This document shows, piece by piece, positions 22,381 through 63,147 of a stretch of DNA of 64,000 nucleotides. Each line of letters opens with the position of its first letter. Positions within the stretch are counted from its first letter, which is position 1. The stretch spans positions 22,035,425-22,099,424 of the forward strand of contig NC_068985.1 of the NCBI RefSeq assembly GCF_001194135.2. Direction: 5' to 3'. The notes beneath the pieces are model-generated. The model saw nothing but the letters and a program-made list of their open reading frames with translations, did no database searches and was not told the DNA's origin. The position numbers and the translations under genes were made by a program. This DNA comes from Octopus bimaculoides (lineage: Eukaryota).

Positions 22381-22493
22381 CTGTATTCTTCTTCAGGATA
22401 TTCTATGACTTTCAAAACATTATTTTTCCAAGCTTCTAGCTCATCAAACTCCAGTTTGGCTTCAATGGCAGCCAAAGACTGTTCAGGTTTAAT
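22381..22493 (-). CDS. Internal exon of the same gene: IKPEQSLAAIEAKLEFDELEAWKNNVLKVIEYPEEEY(R/S)
   Basis: Acceptor ttttattttcttatacctag and donor AG|gtatgt. 113 nt = 37 codons+2. The phase-0 start matches the preceding exon. Helical, charged segment. Confidence 0.85.
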
Positions 22494-23439
22494 CTAGGTA
22501 TAAGAAAATAAAACAAATAAAAAAAAAAATGAAAATAAAAAAAAAAATTACTGCTGCCACCTCCAAAACCACCACCAAAGCCACCACTACCATCACCAAG
22601 CATCACCTGTACAGATATTTTTACATTGGCCCATTGTAGGAGTAGAAGCATTATTGATTGAATTAACCCAAGTTTTTTTTTTTTTTAATTCAAATTTTAA
22701 TTTCATAATGCAGTTTGCAAACAATAGTTCTAGTTCAGTGCATTTACAATGAAGTAGGCATCTAAGGACTGCCTACACAAATTGGTTGGAACAAACATCA
22801 CAAGGAATTTTCATTTAACGGTCATCAGTTTATTGCATTCCTTGCTAAAGCTTATATCATTTGCTGCAACATACACACTTACACTCATACACACATATAC
22901 CATTCGTTCATTCAACATCTATTTTCCATGCTAGCATGGTTCAGATGGGGAACTGAAGTAGGGTTTTTTACAGATGCCCTCCTTATAGCCAACCCTCACC
23001 TGTTTTTCATGAAAGGGAATTTTTTTTTTAATTCCTGAGTTTTAAAAGGAATTTGAAAGCTTTGAGCTAGCAGATTTGTGGGCAGGAAATATCAACAAAC
23101 ATCACCATCTTTCTTTTTTTTTTGCTGTATGTAGCTCAGTATGGATTGTAAACATTTACACACATACACACATAATGGGCTTCTTTCAGTTTCTATCTAC
23201 CAAACTCCTTCACAAGGTATTGGTTAGCCTGAGGCTATAGTAGAAGACATGTGCCCAAAGTGCCATGCAGTGGGACTGGGCTCAAAGCCACATAGTTGTG
23301 AAGTGAACTTCTTAACCACACATCCATGCTTGCGTGTGCGCATGCACGCTCACACACACACATTAATTTGGTGGTCATTAAGAAAATTAGGAGTTGAAGA
23401 ATAGTTCAGCAGAAGTGCCAACCATGTATAAAGATGTTA

Positions 23440-23880
23440 TCAGCTAAATCAGGGTTGGAATTGAGTTTGGAATTGAGTTTGGAGTGCAAGCAGGGGTCCC
23501 CTCCTATTTATTATGGTCCTGAAGACACAACAGAAGAGGTTAAGACTGGCTGCTCATGAGAGTTCCTATATACTGATGACCTAGTGCTTATTAGCTGAGA
23601 CTGTGTAAGATTTAGAGTAAAAGTCCTAGATGTGGAAACAAAATTTAGAATCAAGAGACCTTAGAGTAAACTTAGAAAGATCCAGAAGATCCATGTGGAA
23701 AGATCCAATGGAAAGAGAAAAACTAAGGAAGACAAAGACAGAAATAGTGAAGGCTGATCCCAGGAAACTGAACCTTACACAAATGATGATTAAGGAACAC
23801 AACCAACAAGTTGGTGGAATGCTGTATAGGAGAGAACTTATCCAACCCATGCAAGCATGGAAAAACAGACAACATTTAAA
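23440..23880 (+). mobile_element. Decayed RTE-clade LINE fragment (RT core, C-terminus and 3' tail)
   Basis: Remnants EFGVQAGV..PLLFIMVL, KTGCS*EFLYTDDLVLI and MWKQNLESRDLRVNLE. Ends in tccaacccatgcaagcatggaaaa. Confidence 0.8.
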
Positions 23881-25256
23881 TAACAGAGAGAGTGTATATT
23901 TATATGTACCTCACTGTAGAATTGACTATGATGAATTAAAACCTTGCTGTTATATATTTCTTGTAAGAAGTGTGCATTTTAGAATTTAAAATGCAGTGTT
24001 CGATAAAAAATATTTCTAACAATGTGTTTAATGTATTTTGATTCAATGAGAAATATAAATTTTTTATGAGACAAAAAGCCAGTTACTTTAAATGAAGGGT
24101 GAATAAATATACCTTGTACCTTAACGTCTTAATAGCATTTGTTTTATTGAACCAGGAGAGATGAAAGGCAAATTCCACTCAAAAAGGAGGACACAAACAC
24201 AATGAAGCATTATCCTTGCCCTTTTCACTACCATCAAAGTATATTTTAGGGATCATGATCTATAAATGCTGAAAGACTGAAAATAATTGAGGGAAATGGA
24301 GAGTAGGAAGTTAAGGAGAATTAGCAAGAAAAGAGATTTCATTTACAGTGAAGATTTTAACTCCTTCTCCACCATTGACTCCCTTCTGACCTACTTGCCG
24401 AGAAAAAGGGATTTATTATATATCAGAAGTAATGGGGATCTATTATATATTAGAAAGGTTTTGCACTCAATCACTCATATTATGAGATAATGTTTATTTT
24501 GTCTTTCCATTAAAAATTAGCTTTAATTCTGAATAAAAGCAGCATGTGCTGTGTAGAAATATTCCTTATATTTACACAGCTGTTATAAAAGTGTGTCTCT
24601 TCATACATTATCAACAGACCACACACCTTTTCTAAGAATATAAATTGCTCAAATACTGCAAAATGATTTTAACAAGTTTAAATCATTGGCCATAGTTTGA
24701 AGGAATATAGTGAACTCCATCTGCAATATAAACATGGGAATATAGCATTCCAGTTTATTGTGCTTAACCAAATCTTAACACTTCAAGGGTGGCAATCAAG
24801 ATGAAGACATCTTCCCTGTTAGATTTTGGTTTACCACCTTAAGGGCATAATGTTTAGAATCAGCAGAAAGATATTGAACAAATGAGATGAAAGAAAACAG
24901 CTTTTAGCTTATATGTATAAAACAAGAAACTATTTCACATGAATGATAATAGCAATGAAAATTATACCATACTAAGACATCACAATCACAAGTCAATGAA
25001 AGATTCACTATATGATTGTTTGATTAGGTAGAAATAGCCAAATCTTCCTCATCTCTGAAGAACAACAACCAAAGGTCAAGTGTGTTTGAAGCAGGCTTTA
25101 AATTACTAAATGGTCTGAGTGTCTAACTGACAGAGAAAGTCTTTTACATTGTATTCATAGCAGCAACTGCATTGTGGAGATTTAACCATTTCTATTATTT
25201 TAATAACATGAAATTATCACTTTCTTCATCACAGGAAAGAAGAAAAAAAAAACATA

Positions 25257-25473
25257 TGAGGGGGTACTAAAAAGTTCCAGGCTTTGGGTGAATGAAAATA
25301 CAGGAGGATCAGTTAATTAGGATTTTATTCAACATATTTCCCTCTCAGATTCACACATTTAATGCAGCAGTCCTTCAGTTTTTCTAAGCCCTGTAAAAGA
25401 ACTCAGAAGGTTGGGCCTCCAACCAGGCCTTTCATGATACCCTTAAGGCCAGGAACTTTTCCGTACACTCTTG
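25257..25473. mobile_element. Mariner-derived MITE (~217 bp)
   Basis: TA flanks and degenerate TIRs tgagggggtactaaaaagttcc / ggaacttttccgtacactcttg. The interior carries a mariner transposase 3' end on the minus strand (KCVNLRGKYVE*). Confidence 0.8.
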
Positions 25474-25526
25474 TATAACCTAATTTCATTAGAACAATAC
25501 CAATGACTAAATGAGCAAATCATTAA

Positions 25527-26115
25527 TCTTTACTCTTTTACTTGTTTCAGTCATTTGACTGTGGCCATGCTGGAGCACCACCTTTAGTCGAGCAAATTGA
25601 CACCAGGGCTTATTCTTTGTAAGCGTAGTACTTATTCTATCGGTCTATTTTGCCGAAGCGCTAAGTTACGGGGACATAAACACACCAGCATCAGTTGTCA
25701 AGCGATGCTGGGGGACAAATACAGACACACAAACATACACACACACACACACACACACACGCAAAAACACACACACACACACGCACACACACATATATAN
25801 NNNNNNNNNNNNNNNNNNNNNNNNNNNNNNNNNNNNNNNNNNNNNNNNNNNNNNNNNNNNNNNNNNNNNATATATATATATATATACTCATGCTAGCATG
25901 GAAAGCGGACGTTAAACGATGATGATGATGATGATGATATACACATATATACGACAAGCTTCTTTCAGTTTCCGTCTACCAAATCCTCTCACAAGGCTTT
26001 GGTTGGCCTGAGGCTATAGTAAAAGACACTTGCCCAAGGTGCCATGCAGTGGGACTGAACCTGGAACCATGTGCTTGGTAAGCAAGCTACTTACCACACA
26101 GCCACTCCTACGCCA
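25527..26115 (-). mobile_element. SINE family A copy with an N gap and a family-C tail remnant in its central microsatellite
   Basis: Family A tail and head flank catgctagcatggaaagcggacgttaaacgatgatg (25889-25938). Confidence 0.85.
25800..25869. other. Assembly gap (N run)
   Basis: 70 N. Confidence 1.
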
Positions 26116-26341
26116 ATATTAGACCAATATCTCAAACTACATTTTTAAGGGTGACCATATTGGTCTTCTAATGTGGGTAGAATGACATAGCACAAAATTC
26201 ATAGAATATCCCTTAGTTTGATCAGGTTCTTATAGCAGAGCTTTATCAAGACTGACCTGGGGCTAAACAACTACAACAGTAATCACAATTTCGGAACAGA
26301 AAGTAAAGCAATCAAGTAGAAAAAATAAAATTTATGCTTAC

Positions 26342-26490
26342 TTGAAAAAAATAATTGGATGCAAGCCCAGGTCCAGCAACCCTCCGAGCAATGAAACCAT
26401 CACTGGCTGGTATCCTTCCTCGGCTTTTTATCACTGTATGAAACATAACACTGTCCCATAAACCACGAAAAGCCCGACGCAGTGTGCCGA
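26342..26490 (-). CDS. Internal exon of the same gene: GTLRRAFRGLWDSVMFHTVIKSRGRIPASDGFIARRVAGPGLASNYFFQ
   Basis: Acceptor ctctttctcctttattccag and donor CAA|gtaagc. 149 nt = 2+49 codons. GC/CpG-richer than flanks; lies within track ORF 26312..26593. Confidence 0.9.
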
Positions 26491-28458: not shown

Positions 28459-28596
28459 AAAGAAGACAAAAAAATGCTGCCAAGGGACAGAGTATGACAC
28501 CAAATATAAGTGCCGTTACAGGCTGAATGCAACCCTGCAGGACAATGTGCCACAGAATGGCTTCCATCAGAACAAGAATTTTGTTACCAGACAGCT
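28459..28596 (-). CDS. Internal exon of the same gene: (E)LSGNKILVLMEAILWHIVLQGCIQPVTALIFGVILCPLAAFFCLL(F)
   Basis: Acceptor tatattttcag and donor T|gtaagt. 138 nt = 2+45 codons+1. Lies within track ORF 28409..28612 and joins the next exon in frame (T|TC = Phe). Confidence 0.88.
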
Positions 28597-29699
28597 CTGA
28601 AAATATAACCATTTCAATAATTTATAATGGAAGTTTTATTGATGATTACAATACATTTTTCTGAAGCTGAAAAGAGATTAAGTCACAGATGACAGTTTAA
28701 TAAGGGAATGTCAAACAAAATAATCTACAAAAAAAGATGTTTTCTCCAAGTTGATGAATTCATTAAGAAGACATAAAATTTTAGAGATAATTATAAAACA
28801 ACAATGATACAATATAAGCTTAGAAACAAAAAAAAAAATGTTCTTATTTGACAATTAAAGACAATTTGCATTCTCTATCATTTTATAATAGATGCTTATT
28901 TTTATGACTGTATTTCATAGACAGGCATTCCTCTATTAACATAATTCTGTTCAACATTGTTTTGCTATAAATGTTAATGAGAAATAAATAAAATAAAGGC
29001 AAACATCTTAAAATAAAAATTTGAAATGTGTTTACACCTCACATACTGAATTTTCATTTAATTTTATTTTTCTATTCTTTCTTTTGTAACCTGTTACATT
29101 TTTCAATTCAGTAAAATAAAACTTAAATAAAAAAAAAATACTGAATAAAGATATGAATCATTAATCATTGAACTTCTTTTATTTCATGATCAACACTAAG
29201 ATACAATCTTTATATGTCTAGCAACTACTTCAAGGAGATGTTAACTTGTTTAAAGTACAATACTTAAAATATAAAGTCAAACATTGTAAAGAACAAAACT
29301 GTATGTTATAGATATCAATTAATATACTTCTAAAGCAGGGTCTGCTTCATCTTTATTAATCCACTTAAAATTCTAAATAACACTACTTTCTTCAATGTAC
29401 TAAGTGCAAAATGTTTTCCTTTCTAGTCTTCTACTAACAAGTTGTCTTTCTGCTGGGCTTTTAGACATGACATTAAATAAAAATTATAACAAACTAGGAT
29501 AAATAAACCAATGTAGAGAGGGGCAAGTGTGCAAATTAAAACAAAATGGCCAAATGGTAAACTACAATAAAGCCTGCCAAATTCAGAATTAACTAGTTTT
29601 TGTTACTGTTTGGAGCTGAACCGAGTGGTGGTAGGAGGTGCTCCTTACAATTTTCACTTTGTAAATTATTTACTTCTTAATTTATTGCAGTTGCAATGA

Positions 29700-30600
29700 C
29701 AGCTAACTGTGCACCAAGCACTGCTGCTGGCTATGATTTTCCTTGCCCACCCCCACAAAAGAGAGAGAGAGAGATTATAACATTAGAAACTAAATTAGAA
29801 GTGTTACTATTCAACAATGGACAGTGATCTGTAGATATTGGAAGAGCTCTCAGTTTGCAACTGACAATTTGCAGTAATATTAAATGAATTAAAGCTTGTA
29901 TTGAAAGTGTAAGACTTTTATCTATTACAAAATTAACTAGGAACACAAGCAATATAATGGAAATAATGGGCAGAGGACATGCCTCAACATAATTCTCCAT
30001 GTTTACTACTAGCCATACAAATCTCATCAAGTTTATTTGATGACCTAAAGAAAAAAAAAACAGAATTCTAGAACTGACACTAAAATGTTAGTGGCAAATT
30101 GTAGTTGCCTTCAGCATTTCAAGAATCATAATTAACAGGTGAACATGCAAATGCCAATGAAGTAACCACAGCTGCTTTTCCAGTTTTACTGAAAAGTATC
30201 ATTGACAACTGCATTGCTGATTTCCTGGGTTTAGAGGAGCATTTTCTGCCTCTTGATGCAAGATGTTCATCAGGAGTTTGTTGGGTTGGCACACAAGTTG
30301 CATTCAATGGAATAAATGTTGTAGCAGAGTTATTTGAATCAAAGAGTGAAAAAATACGAGGACCCTATGAAGATGGTACAATACCACTCTAAAGAAAATG
30401 AAGATGGAAAGGGTGAGGCTGCAAAACAAACAGGAATTTTAACCAGTAAAGATTTGCCCAAGGCTTTCCAGTTTTTAGATAAAGCTATTCGACCCCTTGT
30501 GGGTAATAAAGAAACCAGTTTTTAGATAAAGCTATGACCATTTCCACAAATAAAAATGAAAATAAGGTCCTCAAAGACAAAGAAGTTCAGAAGCAATCAG
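29700..30600 (+). mobile_element. Highly decayed, internally deleted Tigger/pogo-like transposon
   Basis: Remnant N-terminal HTH (IITLETKLEVL..NNGQ*SVDIGRALSL) near 29780-29850. Tigger-like C-terminus (ILTSKDLPKAFQFLDKAI) in ORF 30334..30525. Boundaries approximate. Confidence 0.55.
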
Positions 30601-30859
30601 GTTAATAATGAATGGATACAACTATCATTAGTTATGCAAACACAAGAAAAAAAAATGCACAATAAACCATGAACATATTTTAAGTAAAAAATTATTTAAT
30701 CGTTTTATTTTCATCCTTTTTCAAAGTATGTGTCGCACACATATTTGATTTTAGAAATATTTCATGTTTTTATTTAGTTATTTGATAAAGTCTTTTGTGA
30801 TTAGGAATATACTGTAAAATCATAACTCGTGTGTGCCTCTCTCTTTCTCTTTCTCTCTC

Positions 30860-30893
<34 letters not shown>

Positions 30894-32337
30894 GTAGGAA
30901 GGTAGGTAGGTAGGTAGGTCTGTATTATTGAGCCTATCGTTAAAATGGTATTTTGCTTTGCATCATTTCACTTAAAGTCACATTTCACAAGAACCTATCA
31001 ACAATGTTAAGTGAGGAGTGACAATATGTGTCATCTTTGTGTGTGTATTCATTAATTTCCATTTCTATCTCTATTCTTATCTGCTCTGATACTAGTTATT
31101 GATGCATGAAGACAGCACAATATCAGTGGTGGCAAATAAACTCATCATTATTACCGGTGAGACTTATGAAGGAATCTCTACATGGTTGCTCAACCTGCTA
31201 GAAACAGCACTCAAATCTCACTTGTATCACAGAATCATCATCAAAACGATAAGGACACACTGGATAATATAATCCCGGATATTCTATGACTGGAAAATAT
31301 GTGATGTTCACATCTGGAATGCCTTTAGTTATAAGTCTGCTGGATTAGGGCTCACCTATATCTAAAAAAAACAACAGTAACCCTTCATGATTGTGATGGA
31401 ACATAACTATCAATGAACATTTATAATGTATAAATTATAATAAGTGAACCAGATTGTATAGTTTAAGCTTTAAAATATGCTAGCCTATTGCATGACAAAC
31501 TCATTGTATTTCATCACCAACTCACTTTGTCATATCTCATACATCAGATTAGGATCAGCTACAAACTGGAATTCAAAATACCTTCTTTCAGTTTTACATA
31601 TTAATGTAATCATTATGTCGAATATTTTAACTGAGGGTCTTAATTTCCAGCGTTTTAACTGAAGAAAGAATGTAAAATAGAACTATTATTTAAAGAAGCC
31701 ATAAGGATTTTATAGTACTCCTTACAAGATTTCAGGAACATTAAAGATTTAGCTCTTGCTACTGAAATACAATACATATTCAAGCTTAAATTTAATCTCC
31801 AAACATCATTTAATAGTCTCAACTAAATGAAAAATTAGATTTTCAGTTTAATTACTTTCATCTCTAGTCTATTTCTGCTAGATGAACTAGAGAGATTTGA
31901 CTCAGCATTTCCTCTATAAGTCTAAAAATTAATTTTGAAAATGTAATTTTTTAATCTGTTGAGAGCATTAGGTGATGCTTGAAGATTAAAATAAGAGATT
32001 AAGCTTCAATATATATTACATTTTAGCAACAAGAGATGCATCATTATGATGTTTCTGAAATCTTGTATTTTTATCATAAGAAGTATTATGAAATCTCTGT
32101 AGTTTCTTTGTACAGTGACTCTAGTTTTTATTCTTTCTTTAGTTCATTATCTCAGTTAAAACACAATAACGTTTACTGAATATAATGATTACATTCAATT
32201 CTAGTAACTATCAGATTGTTTGTAGCAGCTGTGATAAAAATTTTATACTTTAACAAATTATGGATGAGGTCATTCTATGTTGCGAATGATGAGTTACTGC
32301 TTTCATAGACTTTAAAGATATATTTGATAGTGCAGAC

Positions 32338-32476
32338 CAGTGGTCCTCAACTGGGGTTCATAATGACCCTTGGATGTCCATATAATATTTTGTTGTTAAA
32401 GTTTATGAGCAATAGATTGGTTAAACATCTACAATACATAAAATATTTTAAGAATATTTTTATACAACTTCCAATA
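32338..32476. mobile_element. Left part of a third hAT MITE copy, split by the mariner
   Basis: Starts cagtggtcctcaac, and the interior matches the 54496 copy. MITE-like sequence resumes after 33771 (aatatttataaaaatac). Confidence 0.75.
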
Positions 32477-33769
32477 TGAGGTGGCATCAAAACTAGTTCT
32501 GAAGTGTGCCAACAGATGACAGCACATGGTTGCATGCACAGTGAGAGCTAGAAGTGACCTTCAGGAGGCAGTATGCTGAGTAACATCACCGTGTTTACTT
32601 AGCAAGTTGTGAAATTTGTTTCTGTGATCACATGTATGCTGTAATCTGCAATTTTGTCATGGACAGGAAGTTGGAACAAAGAGCCAACATGAAATTTCGC
32701 ACTGAACTTGGGAAGTCTGCTACAGGGACATTGAGCATGCTTCAGCAAGCTTACAGCAATGAGGCAATGGGTCATACACAATGTTTCAAGTGGTATGGGT
32801 GCTTCAAAAGCAGAAGAATGTTCTTGGAAGACCTGTCATAAGCGTCACCTCCAGAAATGTAGAGAAAATTTATCAGCTTGTGCTTGAGGATCACTGGAGG
32901 ACAATCAACAACATTTCTGATGTTGTTAGTTTATTGCATGGGTCTGTGCAGGCAATCCTAACATCTGAATTGAACATGTGGTATATCTCTGCCAAGCTTG
33001 TACCCTGTCTGCTGACCACTGATCAGAAAGAACATCACATCGAAGTCTGTCAAGATCTCCATCAGCGTGCCACTGATGACCCATCCAGCATGTCAAGGAT
33101 GATCACTGGTGACAAGAATTGGGTCTGTGGGTATGACCCTGAAATGAAGAAGTAGTTTTCACAATGGAAGAGCCCTTCATCTTCATGACTGAAGAAGGCA
33201 CAATAGAGTCACAGCTCAATCAAGAGCATGCTCATCACTTATTTTTTGACATCCATAATATGGTGCATTGAGAATTCATCCCCTAGAGCCAGACTGTCAA
33301 TCAAGAGTTCTACTGTAACGTTTTGAAGTGGTTGAGAGAGAACATTTGGTGAAAGCAACCGGATCTATGGAGCATGAAGAATTGGATTCTTCATACTGAC
33401 AGTGCACCTTGTCACTGAGCTCTACTCACTCATGAGTTTCTTGCCAAAAACAAAATGGTATCACTTCTGCACCCACCCTATTTGCTAGATTTAGCACCTG
33501 CAGACTTCAACCTCTTCCCCAAGATGAAAAGGTGGCTCAAAGGTCGCAGTTTTAACACCATTGTTGAGATCCAGAGCAAATCACAGAAGGTCTTTGACTC
33601 ACTTACAGAAAATTACTTCCAGGTTGAATTCCAAAAGTGGCAGGAACACAGGGACTGGTGTATTTGCTGCACACGGTAACTATTTTGAAGGAGATGATGT
33701 TAAAACCTAGATAAATAAGTTAGTTTTTATTAAACATAACTAGTTTGGGAACTTTTTAATACCAACTCA
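32477..33769 (+). mobile_element. Full-length but decayed mariner (Tc1/mariner, DD34D) transposon
   Basis: 1293 bp with TA on both sides and imperfect TIRs (tgaggtggcatcaaaactagttc / ggaactttttaataccaactca). Transposase remnants: MDRKLEQRANMKF, ITGDKNWVCGYDPE, HTDSAPCH, PYLLDLAPADFNLFPKMK. 34 residues lie between the 2nd and 3rd Asp. Several stops and a deletion. Confidence 0.95.
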
Positions 33770-35820
33770 TAATATTTATAAAAATACGATTTTTTAAAGC
33801 GTGTTTCTATGACACAAAATTCTTGTTTTAAAAGTGATCTAAATTAAATTCTACCTTCAAAATTCCATGTTGTGTTCTAAACACCAGCTAAATGATAACA
33901 AAATTATTTTACTAAATTCTTCATTATTTTGTTTCATAACTGAAACAAAAGCAGTATATTTCTACAGAAATCAGATGTCTTCTCTGTCACCAACCTTTAC
34001 TTGTTTCTAAGCAAAATAATATTTTCCCCATAACTAATGTTTTTCATGGAAGACTAGCAATGAACAAAGCTTGTATCACAGTAATGCATGTTTACAACCA
34101 TCACCTGATTTCAAGTATGATTTCATTAAATGATATGTTTGAAGACAATAGAACATTTCATTTACACACCAAAATCTACTTTTATCTACCATCTATATTT
34201 CCTGTGTTGTTGTATGCTACTGGACCATAAATATTACCCTAGAACGATTTGGATATGTTGAAAGTCTTTCAAATAGGATACACTTGCCAAACACTTGGAG
34301 CATCACAGATTAACCATTTGCAGAATTATCAAATTCAACAAAGTTGCATTTGCCAGCCAACTATTTCTGAATTAATTCAGAAATAGTGGTTGTGCTGGTT
34401 TAGTCATGTGAACTGAATGGATCATTTTCTGGACAATGGACACCTATGGAGATGGAGATAGATCAAGGAAAGCATCCTAAGAGCATTCTGTTTAAAGAAT
34501 TAATGATAACAATCAGATAGTACAGCTTTCAATTCAGTATCTCACACAGAGAGCGTGAGTGGAGAGAGAAAAGCTCAATTCTTCAATATAACTAAGATAA
34601 CATCACAAAGGTGGGGTTTCTTCTTCAGTCTTAAGCATCTATTAACATAAACACTGTTAAATACCTTGGCTACTCGCTAGATGCAAACATACACATACAT
34701 ACTTGATGAGCTTCCTTACCAAATATCATTTGTTGATAAAAATAACAGCTTAATAATGACAAAATTAGTTGGGCATCCTATGGACCAAAGAGCATTTAAA
34801 GGTAAATATACATTGAAGTTAAGCATCTGAGAGACACATCTCACCTCAGATAAGACACTCGTCTGTAGCACCCAAGTATACAACAAAAGCTTGCAGTGGA
34901 TTAGATATTGATACCTCTGAGCTGATAATGTGATGCTATATATATCCTCTTGGTCATTTTACTTCTGTTTGATTGGTAGGTCAGCCTCTACTCACAGATG
35001 CACTACAAATTCTTGCCCATCAATGGGCTCTGGCCTCTTCCTGTTTCTTTTTTATAATTACATAGCCTCACCTAAACACCCATCTGATACCATTCCATTC
35101 TATTTTTCTCTTTTTACATTTGCTGCATCTTATTACTCAACATTTGGGTAGGCTTTTTACACACACACACACACACACTCAGACACATGCATGTACAGAC
35201 ACAACTTGCCATGCATGCACAGACACGCATGCGTGCATGTATGACAACACATGCGCATACATACACACAGGTTAAGCTAATGTATTTAATTGAAAAACAC
35301 ATAGAATAATGTTTGAAGACTTTCAAATTTTTCAGAATAATAATTTATACATGCAATTAAACTGAATACATTTATGGAAATTAATTTGAATTCTCTGAGA
35401 AAAGAATCATAGGAAAGTGATTTTAATGGCAAGAGAGAAGAGTACTTTTTTTTATTAAATTGTAAATGTTTTCCTTTGATCATTTAATAGAAAAGATTCT
35501 CTTATTTACTTGACTGAAAATATTTCAAGTTTTTATTCTTTCATACAATATGTATATATATTTTTTTTTAATGTCTTAAATTATTCTGAATCTCTTTACA
35601 GAGTGATATTGATTTTGTAAGCAAGATATCTATTTTTAAATTTCAATATGTAAATTCTCATATAAACATTACTTTCATTTGTTAATACTTGTCAGAATTA
35701 TACCAAGATTCTTATCAAGTAAGAATTATTAAAATATATCTAAGATTTTCAGAGCAGACCTTCCTATCAAACTAAAACAGGATAAACTGCTTTCTTCTAT
35801 AATCACATTCACACACACAG

Positions 35821-35851
<31 letters not shown>

Positions 35852-37034: not shown

Positions 37035-37086
<52 letters not shown>

Positions 37087-50077: not shown

Positions 50078-50102
50078 CTATAATAATAATAATAATAATA
50101 AC

Positions 50103-50134
<32 letters not shown>

Positions 50135-50136
<2 letters not shown>

Positions 50137-50410
50137 TCGTTTTATTGGCCACAAGGGCTAATATCAATTAAAAACATGTAAGGACAAAGACAGGACGAAG
50201 GTTACAAAAGGTTTTGTCCGAAAAGGTAGGAAAGTTCGTCTAAACAGAGGAAGAAAACGGAATAAGATATAACAAATAAATAGATAAATAAATAAATAAA
50301 TAGAACTCCCAAAGGGGGAGGCGCTTCGAAAAAGGAAAGGTTACACGTGGAAAAACCCATAAAACCATGGGAGCCTGGTCAGAAAAAATAAGAAAGGGGT
50401 ATAGAGCCCT
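50135..50410 (-). mobile_element. Probable LINE 3' end, tail-to-tail with the Dong fragment
   Basis: Non-SINE, pyrimidine-rich minus-strand sequence ending in aataaaacgaat+(TTA)n. A similar arrangement occurs at 40167-40440. Family not identified. Confidence 0.35.
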
Positions 50411-50645
50411 TTCTCCTAATAATAATAATGGTTTCAAATTTTGGTACAAAGCCATCAGTTTTAAGGGATGGGATAAGTTGATTACATCAACCCCCATGCT
50501 CAGCTGATACTTTATGTCATTGACACGAAAAGGGGGAAAGGCAAAGATGACATTGGTGAGGTTTGAACTTAGAACATAAAGCATTGAAGGAAATGCTATT
50601 AAGCATTTTGTTTGATGTGCTAATGATTCTGCCTGCATACAACCT

Positions 50646-50646
<1 letters not shown>

Positions 50647-50688
<42 letters not shown>

Positions 50689-50693
50689 TGATG

Positions 50694-50776
<83 letters not shown>
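50647..50776. repeat. (AAT)n microsatellite with GAT interruptions
   Basis: Direct reading. Confidence 0.95.
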
Positions 50777-50777
<1 letters not shown>

Positions 50778-50778
<1 letters not shown>

Positions 50779-51110
50779 CAGCGTCGCCTTACTGGCATTT
50801 GTGCCGGTGGCACATGAAAAAACATTCAAGCTAGGTTGTTGCCAGTGCCACTGGACTGGCACCTGTGCAGGTGGCACGTAAAAAACACCATTTTGAGTGT
50901 GGCCGTTACCAGTACCGCTTGACTGGCCCTTGTGCCAGTGGCACGTAAAAGCACCCACTACACTCTCGGAGTGGTTGGCGTTAGGAAGGGCATCCAGCTG
51001 TAGAAACTCTGCCAGATCAGATTGGAGCCTGGTGCAGCCATCTGGTTTCACTAGTCCTCAGTCAAATCGTCCAACCCATGCTAGCATGGAAAGCGGACGT
51101 TAAACAATGA
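50778..51110 (+). mobile_element. SINE-like family C copy inside a (TAA)n array
   Basis: Near-identical to 8519-8877, with (TAA)n on both sides. Confidence 0.9.
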
Positions 51111-51122
51111 ATAATAATAATA

Positions 51123-51153
<31 letters not shown>

Positions 51154-51386
51154 TCTTTTCTACAAAAGACACAAGGGGGGAGGGGACTAGTTGATTACAT
51201 CAGCCCCAGTGTTCCACTAGTACTTAATATGTAGACCCCGAAAGGATGAAGGTCAAAGCCGACCTCAGTGGAATTTGAATAATAAGAGCACCACAACAAA
51301 CCACAGCATATACCCAAGGCACATAGAGCTGCACTAGGCAGTGCAGTGAAAGTATGTGATAAAAATAAAGACTACTGAATAATAAC

Positions 51387-51457
<71 letters not shown>

Positions 51458-51646
51458 TGATGATAATAATGAAAATAATAATCCTTTCTGAAATTTTGCG
51501 GGAGAGGACTAGTCAATTACATCAAATTTCACCCCAAAAGGATGAAAGGCAAAGTCAACCTCGGTGGAATTCGAACTCAGAATGTAGCAACAGGCAAAAT
51601 ATTGCTAAGCATTTCATCCAGGGTGCTAGTAACTCTGCCAGCTCAT

Positions 51647-51680
<34 letters not shown>

Positions 51681-52670
51681 GTCTGAAATTTTGGCACAAG
51701 GCCAGCAATTTCGGGAGAAGGAGTAAGTTGATTACATCGACCCCTGTGCTCAGCTGCCACTTATTTTCTTTTCTACTCTAGGCACAAGGCTCGAAATTTA
51801 TGGGGAGGGAGCCAGTCAATTAGATTGACCCCAGTACGCAACTGGTACTTAATTTATCAATCCCGAAAGTCAAAGTTGACCTCGGTGGAATTTGAACTCA
51901 GAACATAAAGACAGACGATATACCATTAAGCATTTCGCCTGGCGTGCTAACGTTTCTGCCAGCTCGCCGCCTTATTTTATCAACCTTGAAAGGAAGAAAG
52001 GTAATGTTGACTCCAACAGAATTTGAACTCAAAAAATGTGAAGCCAGAAGAAATGCCACTAAGCATCCTTGTGCCTAACTAATTTTTTTTTTGCAGCCTT
52101 TAGCCCTGCAATAAGTTTGTTACATTCTATCTTTTTTTCTTTCATACCAAACAAAAACAGCCACTAGTAGCCAGCATGTATCTATTTCTGGTGATACATC
52201 GACCGCCTTTATTTTTAAGGACGAGTTTGTCATTCTTTAGCAAGTGTTACAGAGTATTTCTTGACTTCATCTATCATCAGAAAGCTCACCTCTACCATGC
52301 CAAACATTTTTCCTTGAGCAACATATGTTTTGCTGTTTCAGATTGATTTAACACACTTCCAAAATTTGGTCTTACATCACTTGATCCACTTACATTATAT
52401 AACATGTAATACATTTTTTGAGTGACCTCTTCGACCTGTTGCAATATGCTTAAGGAAACTGTTCTTCCATTCTTATGAAATAAATATTTGGCATTTTTCA
52501 AATCTTGTGGCAATAAAAAAAAACTGATGGTCTCATTTAAACAGTATTAGTAAAACTGTTAACAGTTGTTTGCTAGCCATAGCTATTAATGATGTCAGTG
52601 TCAATGGTGGTGGTGGTGGTGGTGGTGGTGGTAGTTGTATTGACAGTATTTGTAGGTGTGTTGTTACTCC

Positions 52671-52878
52671 TACTCTTATGCTTTACTTGTTTCAGTCATT
52701 TGACTGCGGCCATGCTGGAGCACCACCTTTAGTCAAGCAAATTGACCCCAGGATTTATTCTTTGTAAGCCAAGTACTTATTCTATTGGTCTCTTTTGCTG
52801 AACCGCTAAGTTACGGGAGCGTAAACACACCAGCATTGGTTGTCAAGCGATGTTGGAGGGACAAACACTGACACACAA

Positions 52879-52915
<37 letters not shown>

Positions 52916-53079
52916 CGACGGGCTTCTTTTCAGTTTCTGTCTACCAAATCCACTCACAAGGCTTTGGTCGGCCCGAGGCTATAGTAGAAGACACTTCCCC
53001 AAGGTGTCATGCTGTGGGACTGAACCCGGAACCATGTGGTTGGTAAGCAAGCTACTTACCACACAGCCACTCCTGCACC
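52671..53079 (-). mobile_element. SINE family A, full copy
   Basis: Reverse complement of 54832-55220. Confidence 0.9.
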
Positions 53080-53379
53080 AGTTAACTTTTTTTAATTTCC
53101 ATTGTTGTCGTTATCTTGTCGTTATTAATGTTGCTTTTTACTTTTTGTCATCATTATAATTATGTTGCTGTTGTCGCAATTTATTGAAAAAGTGGTCACA
53201 GTGGTGTTGGGTGATAACAGTGATGTCACTGTTACCACCCATTCTTTTGTTGTTGTTGTTGTTGTCTCTGTTAGTATTGGTGGTGATGCTTTAGCTGAAG
53301 ATAGGAAAGCTAATGTCAAAACTGCTATCCCAAACACTATTTAACTCTCTATAGAATTCTTTGAAAAATTTCAACATCG

Positions 53380-53411
<32 letters not shown>

Positions 53412-54495
53412 CATTTTTTTAATGAGTAAGTTACAGAAAAAAAAAATTAACAAATTCCACCTTAAAGGATGAGAACAAAACAAGTGACCAGTTACTCAGG
53501 ATCCTGGTCAATTCAGTAACAACACAGAACAAACATTTTTAAACACAGAAGGCCTTCGTGCGGGTGATACGTAAAAGCACCCACTACACTCTCGGAGTGG
53601 CTGGCGTTAGGAAGGGCATCCACCTGTAGAAACTCTGCCAAATCAGATTGGAGCCTGGTGCAGCCATCTGGTTCACCAGTCCTCAGTCAAATCGTCCAAC
53701 CCATGCTAGCATGGAAAGCGGACGTTCAACGATGATGATGATGATGATGAGAATATTAAAATGCAGCTAAAACAAGACTTATAAATGATCTGAACTGGTG
53801 TTTGGCCAATACAAAAACAAAAATATACAAAATATAAAATACAAAGGACAACAACAGAAATAAAAGCACGTTTTTGCTCCTACAAAAAGTAATAATAAAA
53901 GTAGACTCAATGACATTTAGCCAGTATGCAGCCCACTGAATCCTTTGGCAAATAACAAAAGAACCTAGTTAGTAATATAGCTATCAACAAAGCTATGTCC
54001 TGCCTTTATTCTATGCTATATAACCTAATTAATTACAACTGTTTACTTTGAAAGGCAACACTATACACCAAATTTAATCTTGTCTACTTCTGAATCCTAA
54101 CTAATAACACTATATGACATCAAACTAATATCCATTTTTTAAAAAGGTGTAAGATTTGGAATTTATAGAAGGAAAAAATTGAAATATTAATGAGTTTTTC
54201 TCACCCAAGGGTATTAGCAACGTAAGCAATATCACCAAATTTTAACTATTACCACCATGTTAAAATCTACTTCAAATATCATATTTAATGAGACAGAGTT
54301 AAAGAAGATAAAATATTGAATAAATAACTGAATATTTACATGCAGGTGCATGTTAATAATTTTAAGCCAAGTATTGACAGAGCTATAAAAAGTGAAAGTC
54401 TACAATTTAGTTATTTATTCTGTCATTGGTTCCAAACATTGGACTATGGTCATGCAGAGGCATTACCTTCAAAGAAAAAGTTGGATTATACAGAC

Positions 54496-54743
54496 CAGTG
54501 GTTCTCAATCAGGGTCTACATGACCCTTGGGGTTGCATATAAAATTTTGTTGTTAAAATTTATGAGCAATAAATTGGTTATACATTTACAATACACAAAA
54601 ATATTTTAACAATTTTTTTATACAATTCTTAATAATATTACATAAAAATAAAATAGGACTTTTTTTCTAAAAATTGAATGGCTGCAAGGGTCCACGTGAG
54701 TAAAATAGGACTCCATAGGTTAAAAAATGGTTCAGAACCACTG
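54496..54743. mobile_element. hAT MITE, same family, uninterrupted (248 bp)
   Basis: TIR cagtggttctcaa / ttcagaaccactg. 8-bp TSD ATACAGAC/CTACAGAC. Interior similar to 20023-20678. Confidence 0.85.
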
Positions 54744-54831
54744 CTACAGACCATTAGTACTTGGCCAGTACTCATTTTATTAACCTAAGGCAAAGTCAAT
54801 CTGAGTAAGATTTGAATTCAGAAAGCAAGGA

Positions 54832-55220
54832 GGCATAGGAGTGGCTGTGTGGTAAGTAGCTTGCTTACCAGCCACATGATTCCGGGTTCAGTCCCACTAT
54901 AGCCTCAGGCCGACCAAAGCCTTGTGAGTGGATTTGGTAGACGGAAACTGAAAGAAGCCTGTCATATATGTGTATATATATATATGTGTGTGTGTATGTG
55001 TGTGTATATGTTTGTGTGTCTGTGTTTGTCCCCCAAACATCGCTTGACAACCGATGCTGGTGTGTTTACGTTCCCGTAACCTAGCGGTTCAGCATAAGAG
55101 ACTGATAGAATAAGTACTAGGCTTCCAAAGAATAAGTCCTGGGCTCAATTTGCTCGACTAAAGGCGGTGCTCCAGCATGGCCACAGTCAAATGACTGAAA
55201 CAAGTAAAAGAGTAAAAGAG
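54832..55220 (+). mobile_element. tRNA-headed SINE family A, full copy (~390 bp, central TA/TG microsatellite, gagtaaaa tail)
   Basis: A-box-like TGGCTGTGTGG, B-box-like GGTTCAGTCC, and near-identity to other copies in the window. Confidence 0.9.
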
Positions 55221-56704
55221 AATACTCTATTGATTCTGCCATCATTCACCCAATGTATCTTCATAACATCATTCAAATTATGTACTCACATATTTACCAC
55301 TCAATTCCAGTTTACTCTTCAGTAAAAAGAAATAGAATGAAAATTTAATTTGAATAGGGGTTTCTCAGAATATATCACTTTTTGTATTCTCTTGAGTTGA
55401 ATCTAAGTTTAGAAGTTGGTGTTAACTATGATTGTAAGACTGTTCTGGCACAGATATGCAATGTGAAGAAATGATGTGTATTGAGTGAAACTGTGCTGTG
55501 AGTTCGTTTTAGAGAATACCTGCAGGAGTAGTAAATAAAGGAAGCTTTGGGAAGAAATAAGTCATACATGAGAACATTGATCCTTACAGACAAAATAATG
55601 TATGTTATAGGATCAAAACACATAACAACTTTCTGTACCATGGATCTTCAATCCATATTATTAATCTTCAATCTATGCTATCTTGGAAAAATAGACTTCA
55701 ACATGAAAATGATGTTAGCAATGATGACAATGATGATGATAAGCATAAAGAAAATTATTAAAATTATATTACTCACCAGGGCAATCAATATCGTAGACCA
55801 GGAAAAATCCTATGTGAGCCAATAGTGTTACAACAGGCATCCTTGAAGAAGATTAAACAATCATTATTAATTATTATGATGACTGAAAATTATAATTCAA
55901 AATCTTCACTGGTGGTAAAATATTAGACAAGGATGCATTAAGGTGTCTAGTTTAGTGGCTCATGTTTCAATGTTCAAACACTAGTGGGGTCAATTTTCAG
56001 CAATTTTGCTTTATAATGTCAATAAAATAAGAAACTGGAGTAGACTCGAGTGACAACACTCTTTTCTTTCATTAAAAAAAAAAAAAATTACTTAAGGTTT
56101 TTAGTTAAATTTTTTTTCAATGAGAAGTATAAAAATATTTAGCAAATTAATTATGGAAATTATGCAGAAATTTCATTCAAAAGAATTATTTTGTAGCTTA
56201 GGTTTTAGAAATTAGAGAATGAGAGAATAACACAAGAGAAAAGTAAAAGGAATAAAAAAAAGCGAGAGAGGGAGAGGAGTAATTACAGAAAATGGAAGAG
56301 TAGAGAAAAATAGATATCGAAAAGTATAGATAGAAGAGAAAGAGATGAGAGTAAGAGGAAAATGAAGAGTGTTGAAGAAAGAAGGCAGAGGAATAGATAG
56401 AGAAGACAGTAAAGTAACAGAAATTAGAACGACTGGTGAAAGAAGTAAAAAGATAAAGTGAGGAAAATGGAGGGAAAGAATCAAAGAAAGAGATTCAACA
56501 AAAAATTTGTTTATCAAAGAGGAGGTGCAGGCATGGCTACATGGTAAGTCTGCTTCCCAACCACATGGATTTGGGTTCTGTTCCACTGCATGGCACTTTG
56601 GGCAAATGTCTTCAACTGTAGCCCTGAGCTAATCAAAACTTTTTCAGTGAATTTGGTACGTGGAAACTGCATGAAGCTCATTGCTGTGTGTGTGTGTGTG
56701 TGTA

Positions 56705-61110: not shown

Positions 61111-61326
61111 CCCTTTTGTTACCAAATTTTTTCTGAAATGCACTGCTTTGTTTCAATTAATTTTGAAAATAATGAAGAATTTTCTAAACTAACTTTGTTA
61201 TTAAGCTCATGCTTGGAACAAATTAACAAGCAGTTCTGATGGAAGATTTTAATTTGAATCACTTTAAAACAGGTAGTTTGTATTGTAGAACTAAGGGTGA
61301 TCTCAGGCAGGTTGGTACCAAAAGAG
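61111..61326. mobile_element. piggyBac-type MITE in reverse orientation
   Basis: cccttttgttacc ... ggtaccaaaagag|ttaa, the reverse complement of the 11687 interior. Partial copies also at ~33790-33975 and ~62215-62405. Confidence 0.75.
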
Positions 61327-62471
61327 TTAAAAACCAAGGACAATCAAATAATGGGTGACAAGAAGAGAAATTTTTTGAGGATGTTTTGCAAAATGTAAAA
61401 CCTAGATTGGGAAGTATTCTTACATGAATGCTTCTAGATTTATCTTTACCTATTTAGAGTTTTAAAGAAGGAAAAAATAATGAAAATAAAGTAAAAATAT
61501 TAGTTTTACAATGTCTTTTATCAAGATTGAGATAAAATAATGTCTCTTTTTGAAAGAGACATTATTTTAAACAGAAAAGAAATTTAAATTTTCAACTTGC
61601 TTTCACTGTTCTTAGAATATAAATTACTAAGAGAACTTATTCAGTGATGCAATAGAAATTACTTAGTGATGTATAGAAAGCAACAGTCAAGTTGCTGTTA
61701 CTATAGTTGATGCAGAGAGTATTAAAGAAACTTGCAGTGAGAAAAAAACAATATTAGTCAATGACTAATGTTATTTTTATTTTTTCCAACAAGTACAAGA
61801 GAAACTCCAGACATATTCTAATCATATTAGTCTTCTTCAGAAAAGCATACTTCAACATCTTAGTGATGCAGTGATGAGAAAATCATTAAGTACAATACTG
61901 GTATCTAACATAAGCAAATGGCCACAAATTTCAGGAACAAGCACAGCCTTGAGTGGTACCTATTCCACCAATCCCAATTCTTGACTGATGTTTACTTCAT
62001 CAATCCCAATACTTGCAGTAGTGGTAGTATGGAGGCATGCACTGTAACAGCATATCGCTTCATCCACCATTTGTTGGTGATTCACTACTCTTGGTGGATG
62101 GCATTTTTGTGCCACTCAGGCAACAACCCTCCAAAACATGGGTCTGTTTGAGTAGTTGTTACTGGCAAGGGTTGGGTTTTACAAGGTTGGAGTGTAAATC
62201 CTACCTCTGCTTCTTTTAGTCACCTTTCTATGACACAAACAACCTATTTTAAAGTGATTTTAATTTAAACATCAAAATCTTATGTTAATTTATGTTTCAA
62301 ATACCAGCTTAATAATGACTAAATTATTTTACTAAATTCTTCATTATTTTTAAAAGTAATTAAAACAAAGAAGGTGTATGTCAACAGAAATATGGTAACA
62401 AAAGTGTTATATCATATTTCCTAATATTTCAAAGGCCAAAATAAGTAACATTTCATTGAAAGACAAATATT

Positions 62472-62777
62472 CTTTTCTACTCTAGGCACAAGGCCCAAAA
62501 TTTGGTGGGAGAGGGCCAGTTGATTAGATTGACCCCAGAACACAACTGGTACTTAATTTCTTTTCTACACTAGGCACAGGGTCCGAAATTTTTTGGGGGG
62601 GTGGGGGGCAATCAATTAGATCAACTCCAGTATGCAACTAGTACTTAATTTATTGACCCCAAAAGGATGAAAGGCAAAGTCAGCCTTGGCAGAATTTGAA
62701 CTCAGAATGTAAAGACAGATGAAATACCACTAAGCATTTTGCCCGGTGTGTTAACGCTTCTACCAGCTCACTACCTT
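62472..62777 (-). mobile_element. SINE family B with a tandemly duplicated 3' ~76 nt
   Basis: A single perfect 17-bp TSD attgaaagacaaatatt (62455-62471, 62778-62794) flanks the whole unit. Confidence 0.85.
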
Positions 62778-62990
62778 ATTGAAAGACAAATATTACATCA
62801 GGGTTTATAATTTGGCATTTCAGAATATACATATTCATTGACCAGTGAACAATTAGAAATATCAATACGCTTTCTTTTCTTTTATTTTTTTCTTCTTTGT
62901 TATGTTCTAAGAGTTTTTCAAGAAATGTCATACAGAAATATTTCTCTTTCTTCAAAGAAATACATTTTATTAAATAAATATGATGCTTAC

Positions 62991-63147
62991 CAAACTGGTG
63001 CTGTAAGTGCCATAATGACTGAGAGTCCTGATGTAACTATGCATAGCAAAGGGAACACTAAGACTAATAAGAAACTCCCAAGACCGCCTTTCAATACAAA
63101 GTTCCAGAAACGATTTAAATGACGGGTAAAACTTTTTCCCAAGAAGC
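62991..63147 (-). CDS. Internal exon of an uncharacterised multi-pass membrane protein: (G)FLGKSFTRHLNRFWNFVLKGGLGSFLLVLVFPLLCIVTSGLSVIMALTAPV(W/C)
   Basis: Acceptor ttttttctttaattttcag and donor TG|gtaagc. 157 nt = 2+51 codons+2, open frame with long hydrophobic segments. Resembles an invertebrate/ciliate uncharacterised TM family as I recall it (unverified). Confidence 0.85.

What the first reader, a model, noticed from the sequence alone, without database searches (positions are those of the whole stretch)
22381..63147. Uncharacterised multi-pass membrane protein gene spread over more than 40 kb
Seen: four minus-strand exons with canonical splice sites. The last three join in frame: ...LMEAILWHIVLQGCIQPVTALIFGVILCPLAAFFCLLF-GTLRRAFRGLWDSVMFHTVIKSRGRIPASDGFIARRVAGPGLASNYFFQ-IKPEQSLAAIEAKLEFDELEAW... 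Several hydrophobic helices are followed by a basic, Gly/Pro-rich motif (GRIPASD...RRVAGPGL) and a charged helix. Recollection, unverified: this matches a family of unnamed proteins in insects, molluscs, cnidarians and ciliates with no described function. Inference: an ancient, patchily distributed channel-, transporter- or scaffold-like protein.
Basis: partly seen in the sequence, partly recalled or inferred. Interest (0 to 1): 0.7.

Follow-up and report, generated by a model that had tools for sequence, protein, structure and literature searches.

The report
Octopus gene of unstudied Lips family
The window holds five internal exons of a very large octopus gene for a conserved membrane protein of Pfam family "Lips" (PF25228); the gene and the family are already catalogued, but nobody has described what the protein does.

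Summary
All four reported minus-strand exons exist with AG/GT borders, and the last three join in frame. I found a fifth exon (55777-55841) that puts the first exon in frame. The joined 206 aa are 98% identical, without gaps, to residues 639-844 of an annotated Octopus vulgaris protein of 1211 aa. A transcript contig from a related cephalopod joins the same five exons. The flagged N gaps lie in introns, inside microsatellites, and no coding residue is missing.

The gene runs off both ends of the window. In O. vulgaris it spans about 363 kb.

The protein belongs to Pfam PF25228 "Lips" (187 bits against a cut-off of 27). Every member whose name I saw is called "uncharacterized" or carries an uninformative or mistaken name. 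Members occur in:
- arthropods, molluscs, annelids and flatworms
- amoebozoans, a euglenozoan and a dinoflagellate
- Myxococcota genome bins
- giant viruses

A confident AlphaFold model (pLDDT 87.6) has no counterpart in the PDB, and I found no paper on the family.

The window encodes the family's most conserved core: charge-free membrane helices followed by the invariant R-x-P...RR-x-GPG loop. My best guess is a cytoplasm-facing helical scaffold anchored by hairpins. That guess is inference only.

Verdict: a known gene and family, with unknown function.

The parts
62991..63147 (-). Exon A (157 nt): ...G|FLGKSFTRHLNRFWNFVLKGGLGSFLLVLVFPLLCIVTSGLSVIMALTAPV|W. It encodes the conserved basic pre-membrane motif (GK..R..NR.WN..KG) and membrane helix TM2.
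   Evidence: AG/GT borders. Pfam Lips profile positions 556-606, E 1.1e-18. 94% identical to O. vulgaris residues 637-690. cDNA L003 2078-2153 matches the 5' part of the exon.
55777..55841 (-). It encodes membrane helix TM3 and the near-invariant Asp of the Y-D-x-D turn.
   Evidence: AAG|..|GTGAGT borders, and its length restores the frame between A and B. 100% identical to O. vulgaris residues 691-711. Family HMM E 0.008. cDNA L003 2237-2300.
28459..28596 (-). Exon B (138 nt): (E)LSGNKILVLMEAILWHIVLQGCIQPVTALIFGVILCPLAAFFCLL(F). It encodes the long hydrophobic helix TM4a/b with the conserved G..Q-P.
   Evidence: Pfam Lips. 96% identical to O. vulgaris residues 712-757. Conserved in L001 8387-8538. 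cDNA L003 2300-2438.
26342..26490 (-). Exon C (149 nt): GTLRRAFRGLWDSVMFHTVIKSRGRIPASDGFIARRVAGPGLASNYFFQ. It encodes the basic juxtamembrane helix and the family's invariant R-x-P...RR-x-G-P-G loop.
   Evidence: Strongest HMM hit in the window, E 2.4e-27. Invariant P, G and P in 89 of 89 family members. L001 10114-10243. cDNA L003 2462-2588.
22381..22493 (-). Exon D (113 nt): IKPEQSLAAIEAKLEFDELEAWKNNVLKVIEYPEEEY(R/S). It encodes the start of the C-terminal helical domain. It is the last exon of the gene inside the window.
   Evidence: The donor is supported by loss of similarity right after ...TACAG|GT in L001 and in P0010. cDNA L003 2588-2703.
28597..55776 (-). Intron X-B (27,180 nt). It contains the N gap 35949-36265, which is flanked by (GT)n.
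   Evidence: No coding residue is missing across it.
22494..26341 (-). Intron C-D (3,848 nt). It contains the N gap 25800-25869, which is flanked by (CA)n and (TA)n.
   Evidence: No coding residue is missing across it.
1..22380 (-). Presumed intron after exon D (at least 22.4 kb inside the window). It contains the N gap 18053-18140, inside (TA)n. No further exon of the gene is detectable here.
   Evidence: tblastn with the 98%-identical O. vulgaris protein finds nothing for residues 845-1211. The family HMM finds nothing either. The relative L001 also has no next exon within 8.9 kb.

Best explanation
Shown: window positions 22381-63147 (minus strand) carry five consecutive internal exons of the octopus orthologue of the Pfam PF25228 'Lips' family. 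These are proteins of roughly 1000-1300 aa.

The gene is intact, spliced, transcribed in a related cephalopod and under purifying selection. It is much larger than the window, spanning about 363 kb in O. vulgaris. Its 5' two-thirds lie beyond position 64000 and its 3' third lies beyond position 1.

The five exons encode the family's most conserved core:
- a basic motif before the membrane
- a 49-residue, completely charge-free helix-turn-helix (TM2-TM3)
- a 41-residue hydrophobic helix with a conserved G..QP in its middle
- a strongly basic helix and the invariant R-x-P...RR-x-GPG loop

Inferred, about 0.3 likely: the large N- and C-terminal helical domains both face the cytoplasm. I base this on three points: the N-termini I read show no obvious signal peptide, the segments flanking the hydrophobic helices are basic, and the hydrophobic segments read as hairpins. 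On this reading the protein is a membrane-anchored helical scaffold. Its conserved basic and acidic interfacial residues (K642, R646, D707, D770, R783, R794, GPG) would form a site at the cytoplasmic membrane surface that binds lipid head groups or a partner. The role would then be membrane organisation or lipid handling rather than a classical multi-helix transporter.
For: Identity:
- Pfam Lips scores 186.9 bits for exons B-D and 67.3 bits for exon A, against a cut-off of 27.
- The joined peptide is 98% identical, without gaps, to O. vulgaris residues 639-844.
- A transcript contig joins the same exons.
- pN is 0.07 against pS 0.76.
- The O. vulgaris gene spans 363 kb.
- Nothing else of the protein is present in the window.

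Core status:
- The highest conservation blocks of the whole family are octopus residues 631-660 and 781-810.
- The invariant and near-invariant residues are all present in the window peptide (one search compared with the peptide).

Architecture:
- AlphaFold2 of a gastropod orthologue gives pLDDT 87.6 and pTM 0.69, mostly long helices.
- Across 89 sequences, TM2, the turn and TM3 carry no charges.
- Net charge of flanking segments across the family:

| Segment | Net charge |
|---|---|
| N-side of the first hydrophobic segment | +2.8 |
| Two segments before TM2 | +4.0 and +1.9 |
| After TM4 | +3.3 |

- No other Pfam domain matches and there is no PDB relative by sequence or fold, so no channel, transporter or enzyme family is indicated.
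Against: - The mechanism is inference from sequence features only.
- AlphaFold draws TM4 as one continuous 62-residue helix, not a hairpin. A topology with the C-terminal domain on the other side of the membrane is therefore not excluded.
- I had no model coordinates, so I could not check whether the conserved residues cluster in space.
- Conserved G733 and Q736 inside the hydrophobic helix could instead line a polar path, as in a channel.
- No localisation, expression pattern or phenotype for any family member was found.
Confidence: 0.85

Rival explanations
1. The protein is the subunit of an oligomeric ion channel or small transporter. Three or four membrane helices per subunit would assemble around a pore lined by the conserved G733 and Q736, with the large helical domains acting as cytoplasmic gating or assembly modules.
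For: Polar residues are conserved inside the hydrophobic helix: G733 in 82 of 89 sequences and Q736 in 84 of 89. Conserved charged residues lie at both helix ends. Long cytoplasmic helices are predicted.
Against: No similarity to any channel or transporter family in Pfam or in PDB sequences. The best PDB fold matches, to ABC transporters and pyrophosphatases, have TM-scores of 0.09 or less and E of 0.16 or more, which is noise. The fully charge-free TM2-turn-TM3 looks like an anchor.
Confidence: 0.15
2. The protein is a membrane-embedded enzyme. It could be a CPBP/Rce1-like intramembrane protease or a lipid-modifying enzyme that uses the conserved Asp, Arg and Glu residues at the membrane interface.
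For: Two weak hits fall on the TM4 region: Rce1-like PF02517 at E 0.19 and myxosortase Mrt_core NF040914 at E 0.008. Many invariant charged residues lie near the membrane.
Against: Both hits are far below their curated cut-offs (12.5 against 22.4 bits; 16.2 against 100 bits). The defining metal-ligand motifs are absent: H775 is kept in only 50 of 89 sequences, and the Glu and His near W727 are not conserved in the family consensus. The G-F-L-G-K-S stretch does not fit the Walker A pattern [AG]-x4-G-K-[ST] (read directly from the sequence) and lies between two helices in the model.
Confidence: 0.1
3. The feature is not a working host gene. It could be chance ORFs, a pseudogene, a mis-assembly across the N gaps, or a recent insertion of giant-virus origin.
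For: The region contains assembly gaps. The family has giant-virus members.
Against: Five colinear exons with canonical splice sites join in frame and match an annotated orthologue at 98% and a transcript of a relative. Selection is strongly purifying. Intron positions are shared with another cephalopod genome. Orthologues occur across protostomes. The gaps lie in intronic microsatellites.
Confidence: 0.02

Closest known systems
Pfam PF25228 'Lips protein' family; closest member 'Hypothetical predicted protein' of Octopus vulgaris (P0206, 1211 aa, assembly GCA_951406725.2)
   Same: The window peptide matches profile positions 556-762 in order, well above the gathering score. It is 98% identical to residues 639-844 of the O. 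vulgaris protein. All invariant residues are present.
   Different: Only about 17% of the protein (206 of 1211 aa) is encoded in the window. Four amino-acid differences from O. vulgaris suggest a different but close Octopus species. The family has a Pfam name, but I could find no described function and no paper.
Uncharacterized protein A0A7D3V553 of Fadolivirus FV1/VV64 (giant virus), plus similar AT-rich genes of about 950 aa on giant-virus-like metagenome contigs
   Same: The fold matches over the full length of the gastropod orthologue's model: Foldseek E 5.8e-47, TM 0.65/0.72, 24% identity. P0120 scores 451 bits on the Lips profile. It sits among intronless genes for topoisomerase IB, an EF-Tu-like GTPase, GIY-YIG, ankyrin repeats and UvdE, which is the content I expect of a giant virus (the reading as viral is from general knowledge).
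   Different: The viral proteins are shorter, are encoded without introns and lack the long disordered C-terminal tail of the animal proteins. Their function is equally unknown.
Hairpin-anchored membrane-shaping or tethering proteins (reticulons, atlastin/Sey1, mitofusins). This is an analogy of how it may work, not a claim of membership.
   Same: Charge-free hydrophobic helix pairs with a very short turn are flanked by large helical domains that would sit on the cytoplasmic side. The description of the comparison families comes from general knowledge.
   Different: No sequence or fold similarity was detected. There is no GTPase domain and no reticulon-homology domain.
CPBP/Rce1-like intramembrane proteases (PF02517; myxosortase NF040914)
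   Same: Weak profile hits fall on the TM4 helix.
   Different: Scores are far below the cut-offs, and the conserved Glu/His metal-ligand motifs are missing. I treat the hits as an effect of hydrophobic composition.

Membership tests
Pfam PF25228 (Lips) | Match to the family HMM above the gathering score (27 bits) | tested here: met
   Exons B-D score 186.9 bits (E 7.8e-55). Exon A scores 67.3 bits (E 1.1e-18).
Pfam PF25228 (Lips) | Exons cover the profile colinearly, in the order seen in full-length members | tested here: met
   Own family HMM: A covers 584-637, X 638-659, B 664-709, C up to 758 and D 756-804, in genomic order on one strand. The alignment to P0206 residues 639-844 is ungapped.
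Pfam PF25228 (Lips) | Invariant signature R-x-P...R-R-x-G-P-G after the last membrane helix, plus near-invariant K642, R646, D707, G733, Q736, D770 and E822 | tested here: met
   P785, G797 and P798 are present in 89 of 89 sequences and the other residues in 82-88 of 89. All are present in the window peptide.
Pfam PF25228 (Lips) | Full-length architecture: N-terminal helical/beta region of about 550 aa, membrane helices, and a C-terminal helical domain | not testable with these tools
   Only profile positions 556-762 of 892 lie in the window, and the rest of the gene lies outside it. The full architecture is present in the 98%-identical O. vulgaris protein.
CPBP / Rce1-like intramembrane proteases (PF02517, NF040914) | Score above the curated cut-off | tested here: not met
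   12.5 bits against 22.4. 16.2 bits against 100.
CPBP / Rce1-like intramembrane proteases (PF02517, NF040914) | Conserved EExxxR, FxxxH and HxxxN/D metal-ligand motifs in the membrane helices (motifs recalled from general knowledge) | tested here: not met
   No conserved His or Glu-Glu in TM4. H775 is kept in only 50 of 89 sequences, and the residues around W727 vary (consensus lines).
Known channel or transporter families (any in Pfam or the PDB) | Detectable sequence or fold relationship | tested here: not met
   Lips is the only significant Pfam family, and every other hit is far below its cut-off. The family profile against PDB sequences gives a best E of 0.045, to unrelated helical proteins. 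Foldseek against the PDB gives a best E of 0.16 with TM of 0.07 or less. For the C-terminal half the best E is 1.3.
P-loop NTPases | Walker A motif [AG]-x4-G-K-[ST] in a strand-loop-helix | tested here: not met
   The conserved P-D-T-G-F-L-G-K-S has Asp, not Ala or Gly, five residues before the G-K. It lies between two helices in the model.

The most novel reading that the evidence does not exclude
The Lips family may be a membrane-protein fold with no solved relative that has moved between giant viruses, their amoebal hosts, predatory myxobacteria and protostome animals, and that carries out a membrane-remodelling or lipid-handling task not yet described. The octopus gene would be the animal version of that machine. 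The window encodes its conserved working core.
Probability: 0.3. Interest if true: 0.65.

Novelty: already known. Interest (0 to 1): 0.35.

Why it matters
As a genome feature this is ordinary. It is a correctly spliced slice of a gene that already has a public gene model in a sister species and a Pfam family.

What remains open is the function of the family. It is large: 579 representatives at 50% identity match at E <= 0.001. It is strongly conserved, gives a confident AlphaFold model, has no PDB relative, and has an unusual host range of protostomes, amoebae, other protists, Myxococcota bins and giant viruses.

A family like this is a reasonable target for a first functional study. Fly orthologues exist in Drosophila ananassae and D. 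teissieri, so a fly knockout should be feasible. The family could also inform how genes travel between giant viruses, bacteria and eukaryotes.

The window itself adds the exact exon structure of the conserved core in an octopus. It also shows that these exons are spread over very long introns.

Tried and rejected
1. Looked for the 3' exons (protein residues 845-1211) and 5' exons inside the window. None were found with:
- tblastn using ten family fragments
- tblastn using ten full-length members
- tblastn using the 98%-identical octopus protein
- a family HMM against all ORF fragments of at least 12 aa
- tblastx against the relative's contig L001

2. A read-through after exon D (RYVTSNITPIFIKLFGQG) looks weakly like the next conserved segment (SNFVAQVFKPFSAG). 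I rejected it because two relatives lose similarity exactly at the GT donor and the O. vulgaris protein continues differently.

3. The spliced peptide could not be submitted to the representative search. A two-sequence profile was used instead.

4. The third homologue search, with a protist and bacterial profile, returned only 2 proteins and was wasted.

5. No conserved gene neighbourhood exists around the three bacterial homologues, so no operon clue is available.

6. Scans of viral contigs (IMG/VR) with P0120 and with a back-translated FLVKRI.GPGL pattern found nothing.

7. NCBIfam gave only far-sub-threshold hits and PADLOC gave nothing.

8. Literature searches on 'Lips protein', 'PF25228' and related phrases found only unrelated things:
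- Fish-lips LRR protein
- FOUR LIPS
- C. elegans lips lipases
- metagenomic lipase LipS
- a 'protein LIPS' mention in two mosquito-saliva papers (not opened)

I do not know where the Pfam name comes from.

9. The CPBP-protease, P-loop and ClyA-like pore-former readings were all rejected (see the membership rows).

10. Rfam and the tRNA scan found nothing in the window.

Full report
**1. What is in the sequence**

The window is AT-rich (33% GC) animal DNA with three N runs, at 18053-18140, 25800-25869 and 35949-36265.

- A: 62991-63147
- B: 28459-28596
- C: 26342-26490
- D: 22381-22493

B, C and D join in frame to exactly the peptide quoted. A cannot be joined to B, because it leaves two bases and B needs one.

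A tblastn search with family fragments pointed to 55778-55840. Reading the DNA shows a 65-nt exon X at 55777-55841, with AAG| at the acceptor and |GTGAGT at the donor. It encodes (W)MPVVTLLAHIGFFLVYDIDCP(E), and its length restores the frame. A+X+B+C+D gives 206 aa.

**2. Is it more than chance, and do the gaps matter**

The 206 aa align without a gap, at 98% identity, to residues 639-844 of 'Hypothetical predicted protein [Octopus vulgaris]' (P0206, 1211 aa). The window therefore comes from an Octopus close to O. vulgaris.

Transcript and comparative support:
- An 8.3-kb contig assembled from a public sequencing run of a related cephalopod (L003, SRR8281678) carries an uninterrupted 1212-aa ORF, so it looks like an mRNA. 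It matches the window in five colinear pieces. The X/B, B/C and C/D junctions fall within a few bases of my exon borders. The local match to exon A ends before the A/X junction, which rests on the protein alignments.
- A genomic contig of another relative (L001) conserves exons B, C and D only. It has a GT donor at the same place after exon D, and similarity stops there.
- Synonymous sites are saturated (pS 0.76) while pN is 0.07, so the exons are under purifying selection.

The two N gaps flagged by the scan's program lie in introns C-D and X-B. All three gaps in the window are flanked by (CA)n, (TA)n or (GT)n runs. The exons on either side of the flagged gaps join in frame with no residue missing against both the orthologue and the cDNA. 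The gaps therefore do not affect the reading.

**3. Extent of the gene**

With the 98%-identical protein as query, only these five exons match. Residues 1-638 and 845-1211 have no match in the window. A family HMM built from 65 full-length members finds the same five pieces and nothing else.

In O. vulgaris the gene spans 363,224 bp. The window is therefore an internal slice:

| Interval | Length |
|---|---|
| Intron A-X | 7.1 kb |
| Intron X-B | 27.2 kb |
| Intron B-C | 2.0 kb |
| Intron C-D | 3.8 kb |
| After exon D, to the window start | at least 22.4 kb |

A next exon hidden in the 18053-18140 gap cannot be formally excluded. However, the relative L001 also shows none within 8.9 kb.

**4. 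What family it is**

Pfam assigns the peptide to PF25228 'Lips protein'. Exons B-D score 186.9 bits and exon A 67.3 bits, against a cut-off of 27. In full-length members the Lips model covers almost the whole conserved protein, and no other domain is detected even at E <= 5.

A profile search of 1.84 billion representative proteins gave 579 hits at E <= 0.001.

Where names exist they are 'uncharacterized', 'hypothetical' or 'unnamed'. The exceptions are a few uninformative or mistaken labels, such as 'Transmembrane protein', 'Gmk_2 protein' and 'Mariner Mos1 transposase'. The named members come from:
- insects, including Drosophila ananassae and D. teissieri
- chelicerates, crustaceans and myriapods
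- bivalves, gastropods and octopus
- annelids and flatworms

Outside animals I found these members:
- Pelomyxa, Mastigamoeba and Pyxidicula (Amoebozoa), Entosiphon (Euglenozoa) and Polykrikos (a dinoflagellate).
- Three contigs of 68-69% GC. Two are deposited as Myxococcota genome bins ('Myxococcales bacterium' and 'Deltaproteobacteria bacterium'). The third has bacterial-type neighbouring genes.
- Giant viruses. Foldseek matched the model over its full length to an uncharacterized Fadolivirus protein (E 5.8e-47, TM 0.65/0.72). An AT-rich metagenome member sits among intronless genes typical of giant viruses.

I saw no vertebrate, cnidarian or ciliate, but I could only look up names for part of the hits. 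Their absence is therefore not shown.

**5. Anatomy and likely working**

AlphaFold2 of the gastropod orthologue P0196 (1100 aa, 89-sequence alignment) is confident, with mean pLDDT 87.6 and pTM 0.69. The model shows:
- a small alpha/beta start
- about 300 aa of long helices
- a five-strand beta unit
- the membrane helices
- a further helical C-terminal domain
- a disordered tail

The two most conserved blocks of the entire family are octopus residues 631-660 and 781-810, which correspond to the start of exon A and to exon C. P785, G797 and P798 are invariant in 89 of 89 sequences. E632, K642, R646, D707, G733, Q736, D770, R783, R794, G799 and E822 are kept in 81-88 of 89.

Charge distribution across the 89 sequences:

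| Segment | Length | Charge |
|---|---|---|
| N-side of the first hydrophobic segment | - | net +2.8 |
| Two segments before TM2 | - | net +4.0 and +1.9 |
| TM2-turn-TM3 | 49 aa | no charged residues at all |
| TM4 | 41 aa | nearly uncharged |
| After TM4 | - | net +3.3 |

I also saw no obvious signal peptide in the N-termini I read. Together these features favour both large domains on the cytoplasmic side. The hydrophobic segments would then act as hairpins, or as four crossings.

My best guess is a membrane-anchored cytoplasmic helical scaffold with a conserved charged site at the membrane surface. This is inference, at about 0.3.

AlphaFold draws TM4 as one straight helix, and I had no coordinates. 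The topology is therefore open. The conserved G..Q inside TM4 keeps a channel reading alive.

**6. Comparison with known systems**

- The family profile against all PDB sequences found nothing better than E 0.045, to unrelated helical proteins.
- Foldseek against the PDB gave only noise for the full model (best E 0.16, TM <= 0.07) and for the C-terminal half.
- Weak hits of the TM4 region to Rce1-like and myxosortase proteases are far below their cut-offs and lack the conserved metal-ligand residues.
- G-F-L-G-K-S is not a Walker A motif.
- NCBIfam gave only far-sub-threshold hits and PADLOC gave nothing.
- The three bacterial loci share no neighbouring genes.
- Five literature searches found no paper on this family.

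**7. Verdict**

The gene and the family are already in public databases, so the feature itself is not new.

The function remains unknown, and the scaffold model is only a hypothesis.

Noticed in passing
window 6310-6527, 7773-7990, 19743-19960, 23122-23339, 25901-26118, 38492-38709, 52866-53083: Seven copies of an interspersed repeat of about 218 nt (61-83% identical to the reference copy), all inside introns of the gene. It looks like a SINE-like element.
   Followed up: partly
window 8562-8861 and 50808-51107; related ORF at 18604-18999: A 300-nt repeat pair, 90% identical. Overlapping minus-strand ORFs share a motif of the form MKPDG.TRLQSDLAEFLQLDALPNA. Pfam finds no match. It is probably another transposable-element family.
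   Followed up: partly
window 32781-33155 (+): A 124-aa ORF ending ...MITGDKNWVCGYDPEMKK. From memory it resembles the start of a mariner/Tc1-type transposase, but Pfam gave no hit at E <= 0.1. Its identity is unverified.
   Followed up: partly
window about 40009-40170, 49440-49500, 50080-50135, 50640-50780, 51110-51155, 51380-51460: Long trinucleotide repeats that read as poly-Leu ORFs. The same repeat type occurs in the 3' UTR of the related cephalopod transcript L003, at 4019-4067.
   Followed up: no
P0206 (O. vulgaris protein) residues 635-638, encoded just upstream of the window's exon A: The O. vulgaris model reads P-H-A-G where 84 of 89 family members, including the other cephalopod, have P-D-T-G with a near-invariant Asp. 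The position abuts the exon A acceptor, so it may be a mis-called upstream donor in that gene model rather than a real change.
   Followed up: partly
P0039 (Argopecten irradians XP_069125487.1) and P0067 (Pelomyxa schiedti KAH3757038.1): Two public annotations look wrong. The scallop model leaves the family exactly at the boundary equivalent to exon D and continues into about 340 aa of repeats. The Pelomyxa family member is named 'Mariner Mos1 transposase' although it matches only the Lips profile over its full length.
   Followed up: partly
L004, L006 and L007 (bacterial contigs); L008 (giant-virus-like contig): Lips homologues of 38-50% mutual identity occur on contigs of 68-69% GC. Two are deposited as Myxococcota bins and one has bacterial neighbours. 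They share no conserved neighbouring genes. Another homologue lies on an AT-rich contig with genes for topoisomerase IB, an EF-Tu-like GTPase, GIY-YIG, ankyrin repeats and UvdE. This suggests horizontal transfer of the family.
   Followed up: partly
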